A stretch of 64,000 nt of DNA from Thecamonas trahens ATCC 50062. Lineage: Eukaryota; Protista; Apusomonadida. The position numbers were made by a program, and so were the translations under genes. The stretch is from assembly GCF_000142905.1 (NCBI RefSeq), contig NW_013657657.1, positions 62,001 through 126,000 on the forward strand, in the 5' to 3' direction. Shown one piece after another: positions 17,309 to 26,000 of the stretch. Position 1 is the stretch's first letter. Each line of letters begins with the position of its first letter. The notes under the pieces were generated by a model. That model worked only from the letters and a program-made list of their open reading frames with translations, was not told the origin of the DNA and did not search any database.

Positions 17309-17581
17309 CCAGCAGGGGTTGTAATCTTCTCACAAACACACATACATACATACATACATACATTCATACATGCACATACAATCATCAATCCTCCTACTTC
17401 TGCCCATCTAAAGCCGGTTATCCATCGCGTGTCGCAAAAGGCGCGCCGGACGCAAACGTCGCGCCGGAACGCCGCGCCACCCACAACAGCAGCCAACCGC
17501 AAAACGCCAACAGCCACCACCCAACCACCACACCCAGCCACCACCACACCACCACGCCCAGCCACCGCCACCCTCACACAC

Positions 17582-17633
<52 letters not shown>

Positions 17634-17668
17634 TAACGCACACAAACCATACACATACATACACACAT

Positions 17669-17887
17669 ATGTCGAGCGTGGACGCCCCCCTTCTGCTGTC
17701 CAGCTCAACAAGGGCGTCGTGGTCACCCTCGGCAACGGCAGCCAGCCCATTACCTCGGTACGCCTCCCGCCTCCTCCTCTCCCCGTTGACGACGAAGAGG
17801 GGGGTGCTCATTGCACAAAAATATTTTCACCACACTCACCCCCCCACACACACACACACCCCACACACACACACTTACACACGCGCC

Positions 17888-17918
<31 letters not shown>

Positions 17919-20900
17919 CTCAGGCTATCGTCGCGTTCACATACTCGCAAGAGGTGGAGGTCTCGGCCGTGGCCCTGGCACTCGATGCATCGAGTGGAGA
18001 GCTTGTGGGAACGGTGCACTCAGCACAGGCGCGGAATGCTGCCCTACCGTCTGTGGTGCTGCTGAAGCAGACCGAGGCGCCGGCAGGCGCCACCGAGGCC
18101 TTTAAGGTCAGCCAGCTCCCACTCAACAAGCCGCACCTCCAGCTGTACTTTGCGCTCACGGCGTACACCGATGACGGGTTAGCCGCCATGTCAAGTGCCG
18201 TTGTCAACGTCTACAACACGAGCATCGCCTCGGCGCCGCCGATTCTCCTCTGCTCGCTCGATCTCTCGGCCCATGGCCGCCCTCCGTCGGGCACCACCGC
18301 CCTCCTCGCCGCGCGCATGCTCGCGGTTGACATTGCGTCCAACGCGCTCGCGCCCGCTGAGCCCGGCCGTGCCCGCCTCCCGCCGTCGCCGGTCTCGTGG
18401 GTCACCCGCTTCCATGCCCTTGTCCAGCCGTCACAGGCCCGCGACGACGCAGCGCTGGCAGCAGTCGTCGCCTCGTCGGCCCTCGACACCGTGCCCGACT
18501 CGGCCCTCTTCCTCTCGCCGGGCGATGTAGTGTTCTTCGGCGGACCGCGCGAGCTCCAGCTCGACGTCTCGTGGCACACGCCGGGTGCCGCCATCGTTCC
18601 TCCGCCACTCTCGCTCTCTATCGTCGCCTTTGACAGCACCGGCACCGTGGTCGGCGTTCTCTCCAACGCCGAAAATGGCGAGGTCCCGCACGAGTGGGGC
18701 ATGATTGCCGGCTCGGGTCATGCCCTTGTCTCGGACGGTGGCACCACGTCGGCGCTCGTCGCGCTGAGCAAGCTCGAGCCGACTGCCGTCACCCTCGCGG
18801 TCATTGCCCACGGCGCGTCCGAGCTTGCCGCGCTCACCGCGTCAACGCTTCCGTCACGGGTCATGCTTCGCCAGGGCTCGACGTCGGGCGGCCCGCCACG
18901 GCCGGTCGCCGAGTTTGTGCCCTGCCTCGGCGCCGGCATCACTGCGTCGGGAATGGTCCTCGCCGTCGTCTTTCACGACGCCGGCCTTGCCAAGTGGTCC
19001 ATGCGCGCAGTCTCGGCGCCGCTCCAGGGTCCTCCGCTCGCCGGCTACCTCTCGCAGATGAAGATGCACCTCAAGCACTCGCTTCCGGTGGCGCTCGAGC
19101 TCGACGCCGGTGACATGATCAACTTTGAGGGCCCGCGCCGGGTCTCGCTTGCTGTCGGCTGGTCGCCAGCCTCGGCCGATGCCACCCCGGTTGCGCTCCT
19201 CCTCTCGCAAGACGTCGAGCTGCTTGAGGCCGTCGACGCCTCATCGCCGGCCTCGCACTCGGGCGCCGTCACTCTCGCGGCTCGCACCACGTCGGCGTCG
19301 GGCAAGCCCGAGTTTGTCGTCGAGCTTCCGCTTGTCGCCGACGAGACTGCCTTTATTGTCCTCGCTCTGGTGGTCAACACCCGCGGCCGTGGCGCCCGCG
19401 TCGGTGCCGCCACCGCCACCTTTACCAACATCACCGGTGCTGCCGCCCAGCCGCTGGCCGTCTTTGAGTCCAAGTACCCGCCAGACACGTCTGCCGCCAT
19501 CGTCTCGGTCCTCTCGCGCGACGAGGCCACCGGCAAGTGGACACTCAAGGCGCTCGGCCTCGCCTACAACTCGACAGTCCTCTCATACGACGCCATCATG
19601 CCACGTCTCGCCGCCGACCTCTCGGCAGACGTGGCGCAGGTCCTCGACCTCGGCCCGTCGGACGTCCTCGCCTTTCACGGTCCATCGACGGCCTCGGTGA
19701 CCATGGCGTGGTTCGACGGTCCGCCGACCGGCATGCGTGGCCTCTGCCTCCTCTACGACCAACGTGGCTCGCTCCTCTCGTGGGTCGGCTCGAACAAGCA
19801 TGCGCCGCAGGGCGTCTCGGCACTCGTCCGCGCCTCGCCCGACGGCGCCGTCGCCTACGCCTCGGGCCCGGGCCCGGCCTCGCGCACGCCGCGCGGCGCC
19901 ACCGGCTCGGTCACCTTTGAGCTCGCCCTCCCGCACATCCCGCTCGACGTCGGCGTCCTCGTCTTTGCACTCGAGGGCGACACGTCCCGGACCGCCACCC
20001 CGTTTGCCTCGGTCTCGGCCACAATGGCCGTCCTCGCCGACGTCTCCGCCGTCGATCCAGGCCTCCGTCGCGACATTGGCCAGTACGCTTCGTACAAGCG
20101 CGGCAAGCACACTGGCATTGTCCTGGCCCTCCTCTATCGCGACGTGGTCAAGGTCGGCAAGTGGAAGTTCCAAGCTGTCGGTGACCCGGTCCGCGGCTCG
20201 CCGCTCCCGCTCATGTCGCGCATTGCCGGTGCCGCCGCTAACGTCATGGGCTTTGCCGCCGCCTCGCAAGCCGCCCGCGCCGCCGGTGCTGCTCTGCACG
20301 ACGTCGCGAGCAACATCCAGGTCGACGACGTGTCTCCGTCCGCGCCGCCGGTTCCGGTCGACGCCACCTCGCTCGCCCTCCGCAAGGGCGACATTCTCTC
20401 GTTCGAAGGCCCCTCGCGGATTGCAGTCTGCTTCTCCTGGTCGCGCGAGGCCCGCCGCTCCGGCTCGGGCGGCCTCGCACCCGATGTCGATCCTGTCGCC
20501 CTTGCGTGCTACGCTGTGTCGGACTCCTCCGCTATCCTCGAGGTCATCGACGCCGACAATGGATCGTCGGCCTCGGGTGCCATCGTCCACTCGGTCCCAC
20601 GCTCTGGCGTGCCTGGCGTTGAGTCATCCTCGTCGCTCTCGGGTCCATCGTCGCAGGGCTCGGGAGAAGAGACCATCGAGATCGAGCTCGCCGACGTCGA
20701 CCTCACAGCCAACGTCCTTGTCTTTGTGGCCTCGTCGCCAACAGAGAGCGGGCTTGGCGGTCTGCGCTCGCTCAACGTGACGCTCACCGACGTCTCGGGT
20801 GCGTTTGAGCGGCAGATCTGCTCGTACCCGGTCACGTTTGAAGCCTCGTCATCCAAGGTTAATGCGCCGTCGCTCATCACTCTCCTGCTATTCCGCGACC

Positions 20901-22975
20901 CGGCGTCGCAGCTTGTGCTCTCGCAGCAGGCGCGGGCTGCGCCGTCGGCGCTCCTCCCGCCGGGCAAGTGGAAGGCCAAGACGCTCTGCTCACACGTCCG
21001 TGCTGTTGAGCCGCAAGACGTAGTCGACGCGTGGGCTCAGAGCCAGCGCGGCAAGGTCGCGCCAAAGCGCGTTGTCCTCAACCGCGGCGACGTGCTCGCC
21101 TTTGAAGGCCCCGACCGGGTCATCGTTGGCACCGGGTGGGACGTTGACGACAGTCCGCTGGCTGCACCTGAAGTCTCGACCGCCATCCTCCTCCTCGACG
21201 AGCACGAGCAGCTGGTCGGCGTGGTCTCGGCGAGGTCGCCGCGGTGGCCGACCGAAGACTCGCCGCTCTACGCGTTGCACGCGTCAGGCGAGGCTGCAGT
21301 GTGGCCAGCCTCGGTCCACGCGCCGTCGCTCCTCGACTCGGGTGTGGTCATGCACTCGGGCGAGCAAGGTCGCGGCGCTGACGCCGAGGCCGGGCCCTCG
21401 TCGGGCTCGCACGACCCCGAAGCGCTCTTTGTCGAGCTCGACTTGGTCCCGCCGCAGATCGCGCAGCTTGTCGTTGTGGTCTCGGCCTTCCGCTCGTCGT
21501 TTGACTCGGTCTCTGGCGCCTACATCCGCCTCATCAACGCGTCGTCATCTCCCAAGCGCGAGATCGCCATGTTTGACATCGGCGACCTCCGTGGCGACCA
21601 CAACGCCGTCGTCATGTCCTCGCTCTACCGCGACTCGGAGTCGCCGGGCAAGTGGAAGTTCCGCGCGGTCGGCAACCACGCCCTCGGCTCGGGCTACGCC
21701 GACCTGCTCGCCTTTCTGGAACAGTCACGCCACGAAGTCCGACCGGCGACCCAGCACGTGCTCGCCCTCAACGCCGGCGACATGGTCCTCTTTGACGGCT
21801 CGCAGTCGGCCACGGTGGTCGCCGAGTGGGAACTCGCGCCCGGCTCGACCCTCCCGCCGCTCGAGTTTTCGGCGTATGTCTTTGACACCCGCGGCGGGCC
21901 GGTTGGCCGCATCGATGCCAATACCACCGCTGGTTGCTCCGGCTCGGTCCTCTTTGAGCCGCGCCTCAACGCGCCGCACCGCATCGCCGTCCGCCTCGAC
22001 GCCGTCCCGGACTCGGTCATGACGGTCATGTTTGTGCTCACTGCCTTTGGCGCCGACTTTTCCGCCCTCAACAAGCTCACCGTCAAGCTCGCCGACGCCA
22101 CCATCGCCTCGGAGCCCGACCGCGACATTGCCGCCTACGAACTCTTCGATTCGGCCCTCCGCGGCGAGCACTGTGCTGAGCTCGCCGCGCTGCTCTTCCG
22201 CGACGAGGAGTCGGGCGGGCGGTGGAAGTTTAAGGCCGTGGGTGAGGCTCTTGGCGTCGTTGCCTCGCCGGTCGAGCTCGTCTCGGTCCTCCAGCCACGG
22301 CTGGCGTCGGACCTTGCCCGCTCGCTCGCCCTCACCCAGGGCGACATCCTCACCTTTGAGGGCGCATCCAAGGTTGTCTTTGGTCTCGGATGGGACGGGG
22401 CGCAAGGCACGCTCTCGGCCTCGCTCCGCCTCACCGCCGGCGCCCTGCTCCTCGACGACAAAGCCGCCCTCTCCGAGGTCGTGTGGTCGGGCAACACCAA
22501 CTCGGCGGCACAAGGCTGTGTCTCGTTTGTCGACGGCCGCATCGCCGCCGAAGTTGTCGACGACGAGCAGTTTGTCATCAACCTCGATCACGTCCCGCTC
22601 TCGGTCCGCCACATCTTCTTTGTCGCTGCCGGCTTTGAGGTCAACGACTGGCCGCGCGTCGAGCACACCTACATCCGCATGGCCGACGTTTCGGATGGCT
22701 TTGACGAGCGCGAAGTGGCCAAGCTCGACTTGCTCCGCTCCGGGCCGGGCGCGACGAACGCAGTTGTTCTCGGACACCTCTACCGCGAGTTTGACGAGCT
22801 CGACGCGGCACCCATGGCCGCCGGCGCTGGCAAGTGGAAGTTTATGGCCATCGGCCAGCCGGCCGACGGCACCACCTTTGCACAGATGCTGCCAGCCGTC
22901 CGGCCGTATGTGGTCGAGAGCGGCGGTGTTGTGGTTGCGAACAAGGGCTGCTGTGCTGGGTGCGTCGTGTCGTAA
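17669..22975 (+). CDS. Tandem TerD-domain protein (8 repeats) with C-terminal CaaX; exons 17669-17757 and 17924-22975
   Basis: A ~190-230-aa unit recurs: LxxGD(I/V/M)xxFEGxxxxxxxxxW...LYRD..GKWKF.A(V/I)G. It matches TerD family motifs (GLGWD, DDE.F.I.LD.VP, AYIR, LYR, WKFRAVG). Intron GTACGC...CCTCAG. One C is missing in a C6 run of exon 1. The protein ends KGCCAGCVVS. Confidence 0.85.
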
Positions 22976-23001
22976 ACCGATAACTCAAAGTGCATGCCTG
23001 G

Positions 23002-26000
23002 TTACTTGGCCGGTGTGTGGCTCGCCGGGCACGCCGTGATGTTGGCCTGGAGACGAAGGACGAGGTCGATGAGCTGCTGCTGCGAGAGAAGCCTGGGGTT
23101 GACATTAAAGTCGTTAATGACGGGCGCGGTGTAGCTCGCGCCGACCGACGACATCGACCGCGGGCGGTGGGCCGGGTCTGCCACCGGCGAGTACGACGGT
23201 GGAGCATGCGCAGGATTGGACGCAGGCGCAGGCGCAAAGGCCGGCGGCGAGGCAGTCGGCGGGCTGGTGTGTGCAGAGTGCTGCGCCGGCGTCGGGCCGA
23301 GCAGCGGATTGTGCCCCAGCAGCGGGTTGGACGACGTTCGGTTCATCGGATGGTGGGCCGGGGTGCGACCGGCGGCAGTCGCAGCACTCGCCATCGAGTG
23401 GCCGCCGTACGACGAGTGACGCCGCGGTGCACTCGAGCCGCCAGCGGCGCGGTGTGCGGCAATGGAGGCGCCGGCACCGGGTGCTGCGATCGATATCGAT
23501 GGTGACGACGAGGCAAGCGGCGACGCCGAGGACGCGGCGTTGGCGAGAGCCGGGCCAGCCTTGGCGGCGATTTTGCGCGCCATGAGCTCAAAGACAAAGT
23601 TGACGTTGGAGGCCGTGAGCGAGGAGGCTTCGAGGAAGACGGCGCCGAGCCTGTCGCCGAGAGCGACGGCGTCTTCTGAGCGGACAACACGGCGGGCAGC
23701 CTTGTCGGCATGGGTTCCGACGAGAATGATGGGCAGGCCGCGGGTGGGTGCGCCCATGCGGCGGAGGTGGTCCATCATGTCAGAGACGACGGCAAACGAC
23801 GAGGACGAGACGATGGAGAAGACGAGGAAAATGCCGTGGATGGCCGGTGATGCGGCAGTGAGTGCGGGGAGCGTGTTGGTGTTGGCCTCGTGAAGGCGCA
23901 TGTGCTTCTGTACACCGTCGAGCGAGGCGACAACGTTGAACTGTTCGCGCGGATCGGGCGTCGTCGTGTAGCGCGACTCAAACGGCGAGCCGGCGGCGCG
24001 CTTGAGAAGTGCCGTCTTACCGGCGCGCTCCTCGCCGAGGACGATTACGCAGTACGAGTCTGCGACAGGGCGGGCGGCGTTGATGCGGCCGACCGCAGGC
24101 GCGGCGGCGGCGGCGGCGCCGACAGTGGCAGCGGCGGCGCTTGGAGCGCGGCTGGAGGCCGACATGGTGGCAGCCCGGATCGAGGCCGAGACGGTGGCGG
24201 TGTCGTCAAACTCGAGAGCAAGGTCGCCGTCGCCGAGGCGGGCGGCCGGGTTTGGACTGCCTCCGGTCGAAGAGCCGCCCGAGGCCAGGGCGGCGGCGGC
24301 GGCGGCGGTGCGGTACTGCGGATCATCGACGGCCGGCGGCGGGAGCGAGACCGAGGTTGACCGGCGGCGGTTGTTGAGGTCTTCGATGTGGGCCTTGAAG
24401 GTCTCCATCGCAGTGCGAAGGGCAGAGACAAAGGCCTTTTTGGCGCCGGCGGTCGGGAGTGTGATGACGTAGTTGGAGCCGTGGCGAACGTCGGCAAGCT
24501 GGAAGGTTGGCAGCTCGGTGGCGTCGTCGTTGATGACGAGGTCGCGGAGGATGAGCGAGAGCTTGTACTTGTAGCGTTCCTTGTTGGGCTTGGTGAGGAC
24601 AAGCAGATCGTTGAAGAGGAAGTAGTAGCGCTCCTTCTCGCCGTTGAGGACAAACGGGCCCTGGTCGACCAGGCGCCGGGTCGGGTTGACGAGGCCCTTG
24701 GGCGCGGAGATCATCGAGTTGGCGGCAAGAACCACACCGCGCTTGGCTTCGTTGTCACGCTTCTTCTCATTGATGTCGTCGGCGATGGCGCAAATGAGCT
24801 CAAAGGCACGCTCGACTTCGGCACGGCCAGGCGCCAACGGGCCGAGCTCCTTGAGGAGCGCCCGGAGCAGGAGCGGGTACTTACAGATGCGCTGGATGGG
24901 CTTGATGAGAAAGTCGCCGGCGCCAAGGCCGCCAGCGGCGGCAGCGCGGGTGTCGCAGAACGCGGCCATGGCCGACTTTTTCTTGGCTTTGTCCAGCAAG
25001 TTGAGCGCGTTGACCTGGTTGTTACAGTAGTCCGAGTACATCTTGAGGTACTGCGAAACGTTAATGAGAGCGCCTGCAATGGCGGCGACAAGTTGGTCCT
25101 GCGGCGCATCCTTGCGCGCCGCGAGCAAGTCGTTCATGAGCATGGTGTTGGTCTCGAGCAGCGGCTCGATGGTCATAAAGATCTCATTGACCGTGGAGTT
25201 CTCCACAAACTTGGCCGCCCGCAGCGGCAAAATGTATTCGTTGACAATGTAGTGCAGATCCTGGACGTAGCCGACCTCGGTGTCGACGATTTCGTTGATG
25301 ACAAACATGGCGTTCTTGGGTACGACCTCAAACTGCGAGGCGTCAAAGTCGACAATCTGTGGGGCGGTGGCGGTCGCGGGCACAGGCGCAGGAGTGGGTG
25401 CAGGCGCAGGTGCGGGCTCGGGTGTAGTTGCTGCAGGTGCAGGATTCAGCTGCGGCAGTGGCTTGGGCAGCGGCTTGGCCGCAGGCATCGCCGTCGACGT
25501 CGGCGTCGGTGCCGGTGCCGGCGCCGAAGTCGTGTCCCCCGCCGACGGATCGAGCGGCTGCGAGTCGGACATGGCCGAGCGCATGCGCGGCCACAGGGTG
25601 TCCGGCAACTTTTTGGGGAGTGCAAATCCAGTGTGGAGGAGCTGGTGGGCGAGGTACTGCATGACGACGGCCGAGGCGCTGTCGATGGGCTCATCGGGGC
25701 TGGCCTTGACGAGCTTGAGCAGACGGGATCGGTCCTTGTCGGAGAGTGGGGCAGGTGCAGCAGCCTCGCAAGCGGCAAGAACAGCCGCAGCCGAGGGACC
25801 TTGGGGAGCATCGGCAGCCAAGCGAGCATAGGTAGCTTCCCAGGCAGCCTGGTCCGCTTGCGAGTAGGGCGGATCAAGGAGACGAGGAAGCGGACGATGA
25901 GGATGATCGGAACGAGCAGCAGCAGCAGCATCAAGTGGAAGACCAGCCTGAGCCATAGCAATGAGACGAAGAAAAAGATAGAACTCTTCCCGAGAAAGAT

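What the first reader, a model, noticed from the sequence alone, without database searches (positions are those of the whole stretch)
17669..22975. Giant eukaryotic protein of eight tandem TerD domains with a CaaX/palmitoylation membrane anchor
Seen: the ~1,700-aa spliced product is almost entirely eight ~200-aa units. Units 2-8 start L-x-x-G/S-D-(I/V/M)-x-x-F-x-G, have a conserved W, and end (L/V)(Y/F/S)(R/H)D/E...(G)KW. Unit 1 is degenerate but regains the N-terminal QLNKG motif once the exon-1 frame is repaired. The protein ends KGCCAGCVVS. Established: these are TerD-family motifs (bacterial ter stress/tellurite operons; Dictyostelium cAMP-binding CABP1), and such proteins usually carry one or two TerD domains. 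CVVS is a farnesylation-type CaaX and the upstream cysteines are typical palmitoylation sites. The acidic metal-binding GDN..G.GDGDDE loop survives only partly (unit 6 HSGEQG...HDPE, unit 8 DDEQ). Inference: several TerD paralogue-like modules are fused into one membrane-tethered array, possibly a cortical stress or ligand-sensing scaffold. I do not know of a description of this architecture.
Basis: partly seen in the sequence, partly recalled or inferred. Interest (0 to 1): 0.85.

Follow-up and report, generated by a model that had tools for sequence, protein, structure and literature searches.

The report
Lipid-anchored eight-TerD-domain protein of Thecamonas
This is a real gene of the gliding flagellate Thecamonas trahens: a ~1,700-residue chain of eight TerD beta-sandwich domains that have lost the usual calcium-binding residues and end in a conserved Ras-like lipid-anchor signal, an undescribed but not unprecedented use of a 'bacterial stress' domain in eukaryotes.

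Summary
One open frame (17429-22975, +) carries eight ~200-residue TerD units. Pfam TerD scores 192 bits on the whole frame. Units 4, 6, 7 and 8 pass the Pfam cut-off alone. Units 2, 3 and 5 are recovered by a profile built only from a paralogue. Unit 1 is weak by sequence but folds, with the help of a TerD-rich alignment, as a TerD sandwich (pLDDT 90).

The genome is Thecamonas trahens. A metagenomic orthologue (57% identity) has the same eight units, the same first intron and its own C-terminal CaaX box. The three sequences end CVVS, CALM and CSVM, each preceded by extra cysteines, so farnesyl plus palmitoyl anchoring is likely but untested. In the assembly the ATG at 17669 is one base out of frame with the conserved exon-1 motif. 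This is probably an assembly error in a run of six C.

None of the eight units keeps the full acidic calcium-ligand set. A second eight-TerD gene in the same genome (named 'stress protein' by NCBI) keeps the set in most units and has no CaaX box. Multi-TerD proteins also occur in other eukaryotes, including Chlamydomonas radial spoke protein 1.

Verdict: a new variant of a known domain family, most likely a membrane-tethered scaffold. Its function is inferred. Interest is moderate.

The parts
17669..17757 (+). Exon 1 (89 nt). The ATG at 17669 is in frame 2. The conserved TerD N-terminal strand motif (V-Q-L-N-K-G-V-V-V-T-L...P-I-T-S) at 17698-17757 is in frame 1. A run of six C at 17685-17690 lies between them, so a one-base frame discrepancy sits in this interval.
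   Evidence: The orthologue's exon 1 (L001:1594-1671, 26 codons) runs in frame from its ATG through the same motif to a GTACG donor at the same codon.
17758..17923 (+). Intron 1 (166 nt, GT...AG). It is rich in CA and CT microsatellite. It contains no stop in frame 2, so the unspliced reading from the ATG also stays open.
   Evidence: The orthologue has a 107-nt intron at the same position. No read evidence covers this stretch.
17924..22975 (+). Exon 2: 1683 codons plus the TAA stop.
   Evidence: It aligns end to end with orthologue P0001 at 57% identity.
17924..18481 (+). TerD unit 1, the most divergent. Its first strands are encoded in exon 1.
   Evidence: Paralogue-only profile E 1e-4. AF2 pLDDT 90.3. 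Foldseek matches 3ibz, 2kxt, 2qng and 2qz7 at probability 1.0. 48% identical to unit 1 of the orthologue.
18491..19078 (+). TerD unit 2
   Evidence: Paralogue-only profile E 5e-8. No Pfam hit on its own.
19082..19621 (+). TerD unit 3
   Evidence: Paralogue-only profile E 6e-21. No Pfam hit on its own.
19631..20233 (+). TerD unit 4, followed by an Ala-rich linker (20234-20359).
   Evidence: Pfam 26.2 bits. Paralogue-only profile E 6e-16.
20360..21043 (+). TerD unit 5. A Ser/Gly-rich insert replaces the metal loop, and there is a second insert before the KW motif.
   Evidence: Pfam 16.8 bits, below the cut-off. Paralogue-only profile E 2e-16. The inserts have pLDDT below 50.
21059..21739 (+). 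TerD unit 6, the best Pfam match. It has a long insert and a partly acidic loop.
   Evidence: Pfam 70.1 bits. Paralogue-only profile E 1e-34. Aligns to 2kxt.
21749..22309 (+). TerD unit 7. The metal loop is deleted.
   Evidence: Pfam 28.6 bits. Paralogue-only profile E 1e-21. Loop columns are gaps.
22313..22915 (+). TerD unit 8. It keeps 4 of the 7 conserved acidic/ligand columns (D..DDE).
   Evidence: Pfam 60 bits. Paralogue-only profile E 2e-31. Column table.
22916..22972 (+). Flexible C-terminal tail. It ends with two cysteines (22949-22954) and the CaaX box C-V-V-S (22961-22972).
   Evidence: The tail has pLDDT below 50. The orthologues end C-C-C-A-L-M and C-C-C-S-V-M.

Best explanation
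This is one real protein-coding gene of Thecamonas trahens. It has two exons, and its product is about 1,713 residues, about 175 kDa and acidic.

Shown:
- The protein is a string of eight TerD-fold beta-sandwich domains. The domains are old and diverged, 15-31% identical to each other.
- It has no signal peptide and no transmembrane segment.
- Across all eight domains the acidic residues conserved in single-domain TerD proteins are largely replaced, deleted or interrupted by disordered inserts. These are the D-x-D motif and the G-D-N...G-D-D-E loop.
- The last residues form a CaaX box of the farnesyl type with two upstream cysteines. This layout resembles the H-Ras C-terminus. It is kept in orthologues even though the 'aaX' letters differ.

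Inferred:
- After farnesylation, -aaX cleavage, methylation and palmitoylation, the protein hangs from the cytosolic face of a membrane, most likely the plasma membrane.
- There it acts as an elongated modular scaffold or spacer, not as a TerD-type calcium binder.
- Its soluble paralogue, which has eight TerD domains, intact acidic loops and no CaaX box, would keep the calcium-linked role.
For: - TerD identity. In the four-unit model each core aligns to 2kxt, 3ibz or 2qz7 with target TM-score 0.69-0.73.
- One gene, conserved: orthologue P0001 (1682 aa, 57% identity, 99% coverage) has the same eight units in the same order. Each window unit pairs with its orthologous unit at 99-100% support. 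A third, intron-rich relative (L019) is collinear from unit 2 to unit 7.
- Gene model: the orthologue has an in-frame exon 1 with the same motif, the same donor position and an intron at the same place.
- Lipid signal: the three sequences end CVVS, CALM and CSVM, each after two or three extra cysteines.
- Lipidation enzymes: the genome encodes three prenyltransferase beta subunits, ICMT and about 24 DHHC enzymes.
- Topology: no hydrophobic 19-mer scores above 1.96, and the best ones are beta-strand cores.
- Loss of the acidic set: window units keep 0-4 of 7 conserved columns. The orthologue shows the same losses. Paralogue units 1, 2 and 7 keep 7 of 7 and unit 3 keeps 6 of 7.
- Presence in RNA libraries: seven short contigs that fit without a mismatch (100% identical) lie between 18639 and 22746.
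Against: - In the assembly the ATG (frame 2) and the conserved exon-1 motif (frame 1) do not join. No read covers exon 1 or the intron. The start of the protein is therefore a model.
- Nothing here demonstrates lipidation, localisation or scaffold function.
- The inter-domain geometry is not predicted reliably. The four-unit model has pTM 0.33 and mean pLDDT 66.5.
- Unit 1 has only a weak sequence signal. Its fold model was built on an alignment rich in TerD sequences, so it is not independent evidence.
- The RNA-library contigs are short and could come from contaminating DNA.
- Which residues bind calcium in TerD comes from my recollection of the 2kxt study. What I measured is conservation among 20 single-domain TerD proteins.
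Confidence: 0.62

Rival explanations
1. It is a soluble calcium-binding or stress-response TerD protein. It would work like bacterial TerD/TerE or the 'stress protein' paralogue, and the CaaX box would be incidental.
For: Same domain family. Unit 8 keeps 4 of 7 conserved acidic columns and unit 6 keeps an acidic loop. The paralogue carries the NCBI name 'stress protein'.
Against: The D-x-D motif is absent from all eight units, and the G-D-N...D-D-E loop is complete in none. The same losses are seen in the orthologue, so they are old and tolerated. The cysteine at position -4 and the upstream cysteines are conserved in three sequences while the neighbouring residues change.
Confidence: 0.12
2. 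It is a membrane-tethered sensor of a small nucleotide-like ligand. Comparative-genomics work has proposed that TerD domains recognise a specialised nucleotide derivative. Eight such sites would sit at the membrane.
For: The literature proposal that TerD may bind specialised nucleotide derivatives (PMC7159879, read). The conserved core residues of each unit (W, R, the KW motif) persist.
Against: No enzyme of a ter-like nucleoside pathway lies next to the gene; its neighbours are unrelated eukaryotic genes. No ligand site is defined for TerD, so nothing could be tested. The loops that differ most between units are long, disordered inserts.
Confidence: 0.12
3. It is a decaying pseudogene or a mis-assembled gene model. 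The exon-1 frameshift would be genuine and the long frame a relic.
For: The ATG and the conserved motif are in different frames. No read evidence exists for exon 1.
Against: There are 5,049 bases of exon 2 without a stop in a 65% GC genome. Every unit is under visible constraint against the orthologue, at 47-71% identity. Identical contigs occur in RNA libraries. The paralogue on C9 shows the same kind of one-base break inside a conserved domain where its orthologue is intact, which points to indel errors in this assembly.
Confidence: 0.07

Closest known systems
Bacterial TerD/TerE/TerZ/TerA proteins (Pfam PF02342; structures 2kxt, 3ibz, 2qz7, 2qng)
   Same: Same beta-sandwich fold and core motifs: the L-x-K-G start, G-W, R-L, R...W-K-F...G and a terminal helix.
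   Different: Those proteins have one or two domains, keep the acidic D-x-D and G-D-N...D-D-E residues and are encoded in ter operons. This protein has eight domains, has degenerate acidic sites, is encoded by a eukaryotic gene with an intron, and carries a CaaX tail.
Thecamonas trahens 'stress protein' paralogue (P0002; G000:C9:99149-103677, minus strand) and its metagenomic orthologue P0003
   Same: Same genome. It also has eight tandem TerD units. It is the second-best match among 1.84 billion representative proteins (E 1.5e-45).
   Different: The paralogue keeps 5-7 of 7 acidic columns in six of its units. It ends without cysteines or a CaaX box. It evolves more slowly (68% against 57% identity to the respective orthologue). 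No unit-by-unit correspondence between the two arrays was found.
Chlamydomonas radial spoke protein 1 (chains in 7jrj, 7jtk and 8glv)
   Same: A eukaryotic structural protein with several TerD-like domains in a row. It matches the unit profile at E 8.5e-17 with 2 stretches. It is the top Foldseek match of the four-unit model (E 3e-17, 504 aligned columns).
   Different: It belongs to an axonemal complex and is not membrane-anchored. It has fewer TerD domains. No specific orthology to the window gene is shown.
Trypanosoma brucei FAZ28 and FAZ30
   Same: Eukaryotic TerD-domain proteins located at a membrane-cytoskeleton junction, the flagellum attachment zone (PMC10953051).
   Different: Known to me only from that paper's domain listing. 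Domain number, lipidation and relatedness were not tested here.
H-Ras-type C-terminal membrane signal (CaaX farnesylation plus upstream palmitoyl-cysteines)
   Same: A cysteine four residues from the end. X is S or M, the farnesyltransferase class. One to three cysteines lie just upstream. There is no polybasic stretch.
   Different: It is attached to a 175-kDa TerD array rather than a small GTPase. Modification was not shown.

Membership tests
TerD domain family (Pfam PF02342) | Score above the Pfam gathering threshold (25.3 bits) | tested here: met
   Whole frame 192.3 bits. Units 4, 6, 7 and 8 pass alone. Unit 5 (16.8 bits) and units 1-3 do not, but they are found by a paralogue-only profile.
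TerD domain family (Pfam PF02342) | TerD beta-sandwich fold | tested here: met
   The unit 1 model (pLDDT 90.3) and the model of units 5-8 match 2kxt, 3ibz, 2qz7 and 2qng at probability 1.0, with target TM-score 0.57-0.73. The models rest on alignments that contain TerD sequences.
Calcium-binding TerD proteins (as in Klebsiella TerD, 2kxt) | Conserved acidic ligand set: the D-x-D motif and the G-D-N-x-T-G-x-G-x-G-D-D-E loop | tested here: not met
   Seven such columns are conserved in at least 80% of 20 single-domain TerD proteins. Of these, the window units keep 0-4: unit 8 keeps 4, unit 6 keeps 2 and the others keep 0-1. D-x-D is absent from all eight.
ter operon stress system | Genomic association with TerB, TerC and the associated biosynthetic genes | tested here: not met
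   The gene is eukaryotic and has an intron. Its neighbours are an E2F-like gene and an EH-DH-PH RhoGEF. The orthologue's neighbour is a release-factor gene.
CaaX-prenylated proteins | Cysteine at position -4 of the true C-terminus, with X of the farnesyl class | tested here: met
   C-V-V-S followed by stop. The orthologues have C-A-L-M and C-S-V-M.
CaaX-prenylated proteins | Processing machinery present in the organism | tested here: met
   Three prenyltransferase beta-type genes, ICMT and about 24 DHHC genes. A CaaX protease was not searched for.
CaaX-prenylated proteins | Actual farnesylation, palmitoylation and membrane association | not testable with these tools
   This needs metabolic labelling, or localisation with and without the cysteines.

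The most novel reading that the evidence does not exclude
The protein is a building block of the apusomonad pellicle. [quoted passage not shown] As far as I know its molecular composition is unknown. In this reading the lipid tail pins rows of calcium-insensitive TerD sandwiches to the inner face of the membrane. It would be the first identified component of a lineage-defining cell-cortex structure in the sister group of opisthokonts.
Probability: 0.12. Interest if true: 0.7.

Novelty: new variant of a known kind. Interest (0 to 1): 0.42.

Why it matters
TerD is a widespread domain whose biochemical role is still unclear even in bacteria. Several points follow from this gene.

- **A paired comparison in one organism.** Both proteins are eight-domain TerD arrays. 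One is lipid-anchored and has lost the conserved acidic sites. The other is soluble and keeps them. This is a natural experiment on what the TerD fold does without calcium.
- **A pattern in eukaryotes.** Together with radial spoke protein 1 and the trypanosome FAZ proteins, it suggests that eukaryotes reuse TerD sandwiches as structural modules at membranes and cytoskeletal assemblies.
- **A candidate cortex protein.** Thecamonas belongs to the sister lineage of animals and fungi. A lineage-restricted cortical protein there is a candidate component of its unexplained pellicle.
- **An annotation warning.** Two TerD genes in this assembly carry one-base frame breaks, which matters for gene models.

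Tried and rejected
- **Read evidence for the intron and the C run.** The single read-laying run gave only short contigs inside exon 2. Nothing covered 17400-18600, so splicing and the frameshift remain untested.
- **Unit-to-unit correspondence between the two eight-unit arrays.** The tree is a star below the orthologue pairs and the identity matrix shows no diagonal. I cannot say whether one ancestral octad was duplicated or two arrays grew independently.
- **Shape of the array.** The four-unit AlphaFold2 model has pTM 0.33. I draw no conclusion on rod, ring or packing.
- **Word-indexed protein search for long relatives.** It returned one relative for the window protein and three matches for the paralogue, one of them its own NCBI record. 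It missed proteins that the exhaustive search later found, so its blanks mean little.
- **Literature.** There is no paper on TerD in Thecamonas, on tandem TerD arrays, or on TerD in radial spokes in the held library. The 2012 comparative-genomics paper on Ter systems is not held under the PMC number I recalled for it, which may be wrong.
- **Bacterial contamination or recent transfer.** Rejected. The gene has an intron conserved with the orthologue, eukaryotic neighbours and a CaaX box.
- **Joining the exons.** All searches used exon 2 or single units by reference, so unit 1 was always analysed without its first strands.
- **Terminator/promoter scan of the 3' end.** Irrelevant for a eukaryote, and it found nothing.


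Full report
**What is there.**
The plus strand is open from 17429 to 22975, 1848 codons, in a window of about 65% GC. There are seven starts of the form L-x-x-G/S-D-x-x-x-F-x-G. There are six K-W ends, one R-W end, and a C-terminus of C-C-A-G-C-V-V-S.

Pfam TerD (PF02342) scores 192 bits on the whole frame (E 7e-57, six stretches). The solved TerD chains 2kxt and 3ibz match by sequence.

**Eight units.**
Scanned one at a time, Pfam passes units 4, 6, 7 and 8. It gives unit 5 a sub-threshold 16.8 bits and misses units 1-3.

I then built a profile from the sixteen units of a paralogue and its orthologue only, with no window sequence in it. This profile finds eight units in the window protein. 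E-values run from 1e-34 (unit 6) to 5e-8 (unit 2). Unit 1 scores a weak 1e-4.

I folded unit 1 with a 44-row alignment of units and single-domain TerD proteins. The model has pLDDT 90.3. Its significant PDB matches are the TerD structures 3ibz, 2qng, 2kxt and 2qz7, plus a radial-spoke chain. That alignment is rich in TerD sequences, so the model is supportive but not independent.

A model of units 5-8 built on six rows has mean pLDDT 66.5 and pTM 0.33. It shows four sandwich cores, each followed by a helix. The inserts and the tail are disordered. The cores match TerD structures with target TM-scores of 0.69-0.73. The arrangement of the domains is not reliable.

The units are 15-31% identical to each other, mean 23%. 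The array is therefore old and not a recent tandem duplication.

**Organism and gene model.**
A paralogous frame on a 584,593-base contig is 99% identical to an NCBI protein of Thecamonas trahens ATCC 50062 named 'stress protein'. The genome is therefore that apusomonad.

The window gene has a small first exon.
- The conserved TerD opening, V-Q-L-N-K-G-V-V-V-T-L...P-I-T-S, is encoded at 17698-17757.
- It is followed by a GTACG donor.
- A CT-rich tract with an AG ends at 17923.
- Exon 2 starts at 17924 with A-I-V-A-F-T-Y.

A metagenomic orthologue, P0001 on L001, is 57% identical over 99% of exon 2. It has the same arrangement: an ATG, 26 codons including L-S-K-G-V-V-V-T-L, a GTACG donor at the same codon, a 107-nt intron, then A-V-I-T-F-T-Y.

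In the window the only nearby ATG (17669) is one base out of frame with that motif. A run of six C (17685-17690) lies between them.

The C9 paralogue in the same assembly has a similar one-base break inside a conserved domain, where its orthologue is intact. For that reason I consider an assembly indel the likelier cause, but I could not test it. The one read-laying run returned nothing over exon 1 or the intron.

The unspliced reading from the ATG is also open, which is why the raw frame looks continuous.

Every search used exon 2 or single units by reference.

**Conservation.**
Among 1.84 billion representative proteins there is one full-length relative, the P0001 cluster. Next come the T. 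trahens paralogue (E 1.5e-45) and a four-TerD euglenid transcript (E 1e-33).

Several short metagenomic fragments match specific junctions of the window protein better than they match the paralogue. One lies on a 4.9-kb contig (L019, 52% GC) that is collinear with units 2 to 7 across several frames. This is a more distant, intron-rich orthologue. Others come from marine metagenomes, including TARA.

In a tree of all units, each window unit pairs with the same-numbered orthologue unit at 99-100% support. Deeper nodes are unresolved. All 32 apusomonad units separate from 14 single-domain proteins at only 88% SH-aLRT.

**The tail.**
The three available C-termini are C-C-A-G-C-V-V-S, C-C-C-A-L-M and C-C-C-S-V-M. 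The cysteine at -4 and the cysteines just upstream are kept, while the 'aaX' residues differ. X is S or M, which by the established rule marks farnesyltransferase substrates.

The layout, with no polybasic stretch and cysteines just upstream, is that of H-Ras.

The genome encodes three prenyltransferase beta-type genes, an ICMT and about 24 DHHC palmitoyltransferases. The protein has no signal peptide or membrane-spanning segment, so it is cytosolic, as CaaX processing requires. Lipidation itself is inferred.

**Loss of the acidic sites.**
Seven acidic or ligand columns are conserved in at least 80% of 20 single-domain TerD proteins. These are the D-x-D motif and the D-N...D-D-E loop.
- Window protein: unit 8 keeps four, unit 6 keeps two and the others keep none or one. 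D-x-D is missing from all eight. The orthologue shows the same pattern.
- Paralogue: seven of seven in units 1, 2 and 7, six in unit 3, and four to six in units 6 and 8.

In units 5 and 6 the loop is replaced by long Ser/Gly-rich inserts that are predicted to be disordered. That these columns are the calcium ligands of Klebsiella TerD is my recollection of the 2kxt study (Pan et al. 2011, cited in PMC8779313). What I measured is their conservation.

**Context of TerD in eukaryotes.**
The architecture is unusual but not alone.
- The same genome has the second eight-unit gene on C9.
- It also has TerD fused to leucine-rich repeats.
- It has TerD fused to an NDK plus Dpy-30 module that matches radial spoke protein 23 / NME5.
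- Notes by other readers of this scan mention further TerD fusions in this genome (unchecked).
- Chlamydomonas radial spoke protein 1 matches the unit profile at 8.5e-17 and is the best fold match of the four-unit model.
- T. brucei FAZ28 and FAZ30 are listed as TerD proteins of the flagellum attachment zone.

**Interpretation.**
The shown facts are a conserved, single, long gene, eight TerD folds, degenerate acidic sites and a conserved Ras-like lipid signal.

The inferred mechanism is a farnesylated and palmitoylated protein held at the cytosolic face of a membrane. There it would serve as a modular scaffold or spacer, and the soluble paralogue would retain calcium-linked functions.

The most interesting reading that is not excluded is a role in the apusomonad pellicle, which lies directly under the dorsal membrane. 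I put this at about one in eight.

**Verdict.**
This is a new variant of a known domain family, of moderate interest.

Noticed in passing
G000:C9:99149-103677 (minus strand); L014:3114-7759: A second eight-TerD gene in the same genome, named 'stress protein' by NCBI. It has canonical acidic loops in most units and no CaaX box. In the assembly it is split by a one-base frame break at about L014:4280 (...L-E-F-E-G-P-T-T-stop / V-T-L-G-V-G-W...), and the NCBI model stops there at 1156 aa. The metagenomic orthologue P0003 (1508 aa) reads through.
   Followed up: partly
L018:891-4700 (G000:C68): A 1270-codon open frame with a TerD domain followed by a nucleoside diphosphate kinase domain and a Dpy-30 motif. 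The NDK plus Dpy-30 part matches Chlamydomonas radial spoke protein 23 and mammalian NME5 (E 1.6e-43). This would be a radial-spoke-type protein carrying a TerD domain.
   Followed up: partly
L016:3694-7134 (G000:C36): A 1147-codon open frame that combines a TerD domain with C-terminal leucine-rich repeats.
   Followed up: no
PDB chains 7jrj_F and 7jtk_A (not in the window): Chlamydomonas flagellar radial spoke protein 1 matches a TerD unit profile at E 8.5e-17 in two stretches. It is the best Foldseek match of both models. I found no open paper that calls these domains TerD.
   Followed up: partly
window 22973-23004: The stop of the TerD gene (TAA at 22973-22975) and the stop of the convergent EH-DH-PH gene on the minus strand (23002-23004) are only 26 bases apart. 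Their 3' untranslated regions must overlap.
   Followed up: no
window 17547-17672 and 17828-17923: CA and CT microsatellites fill the 5' leader and most of intron 1. The intron has no stop in the frame of the ATG, so the unspliced reading gives a continuous frame with a low-complexity T-H/S-L stretch.
   Followed up: partly
L019:440-4885; L020-L023: More distant relatives of the window gene in public assemblies. One is an intron-rich 4.9-kb contig (52% GC) collinear with units 2-7. Four others are near-identical 1.0-1.7-kb contigs from marine metagenomes (one from TARA) that span a unit junction.
   Followed up: partly
P0004, P0019 and P0112 (database proteins): Other eukaryote-like TerD fusions in metagenomes: EF-hands plus TerD (848 aa); three TerD plus RanBP zinc fingers (1560 aa); C2 plus TerD plus RanBP zinc fingers (772 aa).
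   Followed up: no
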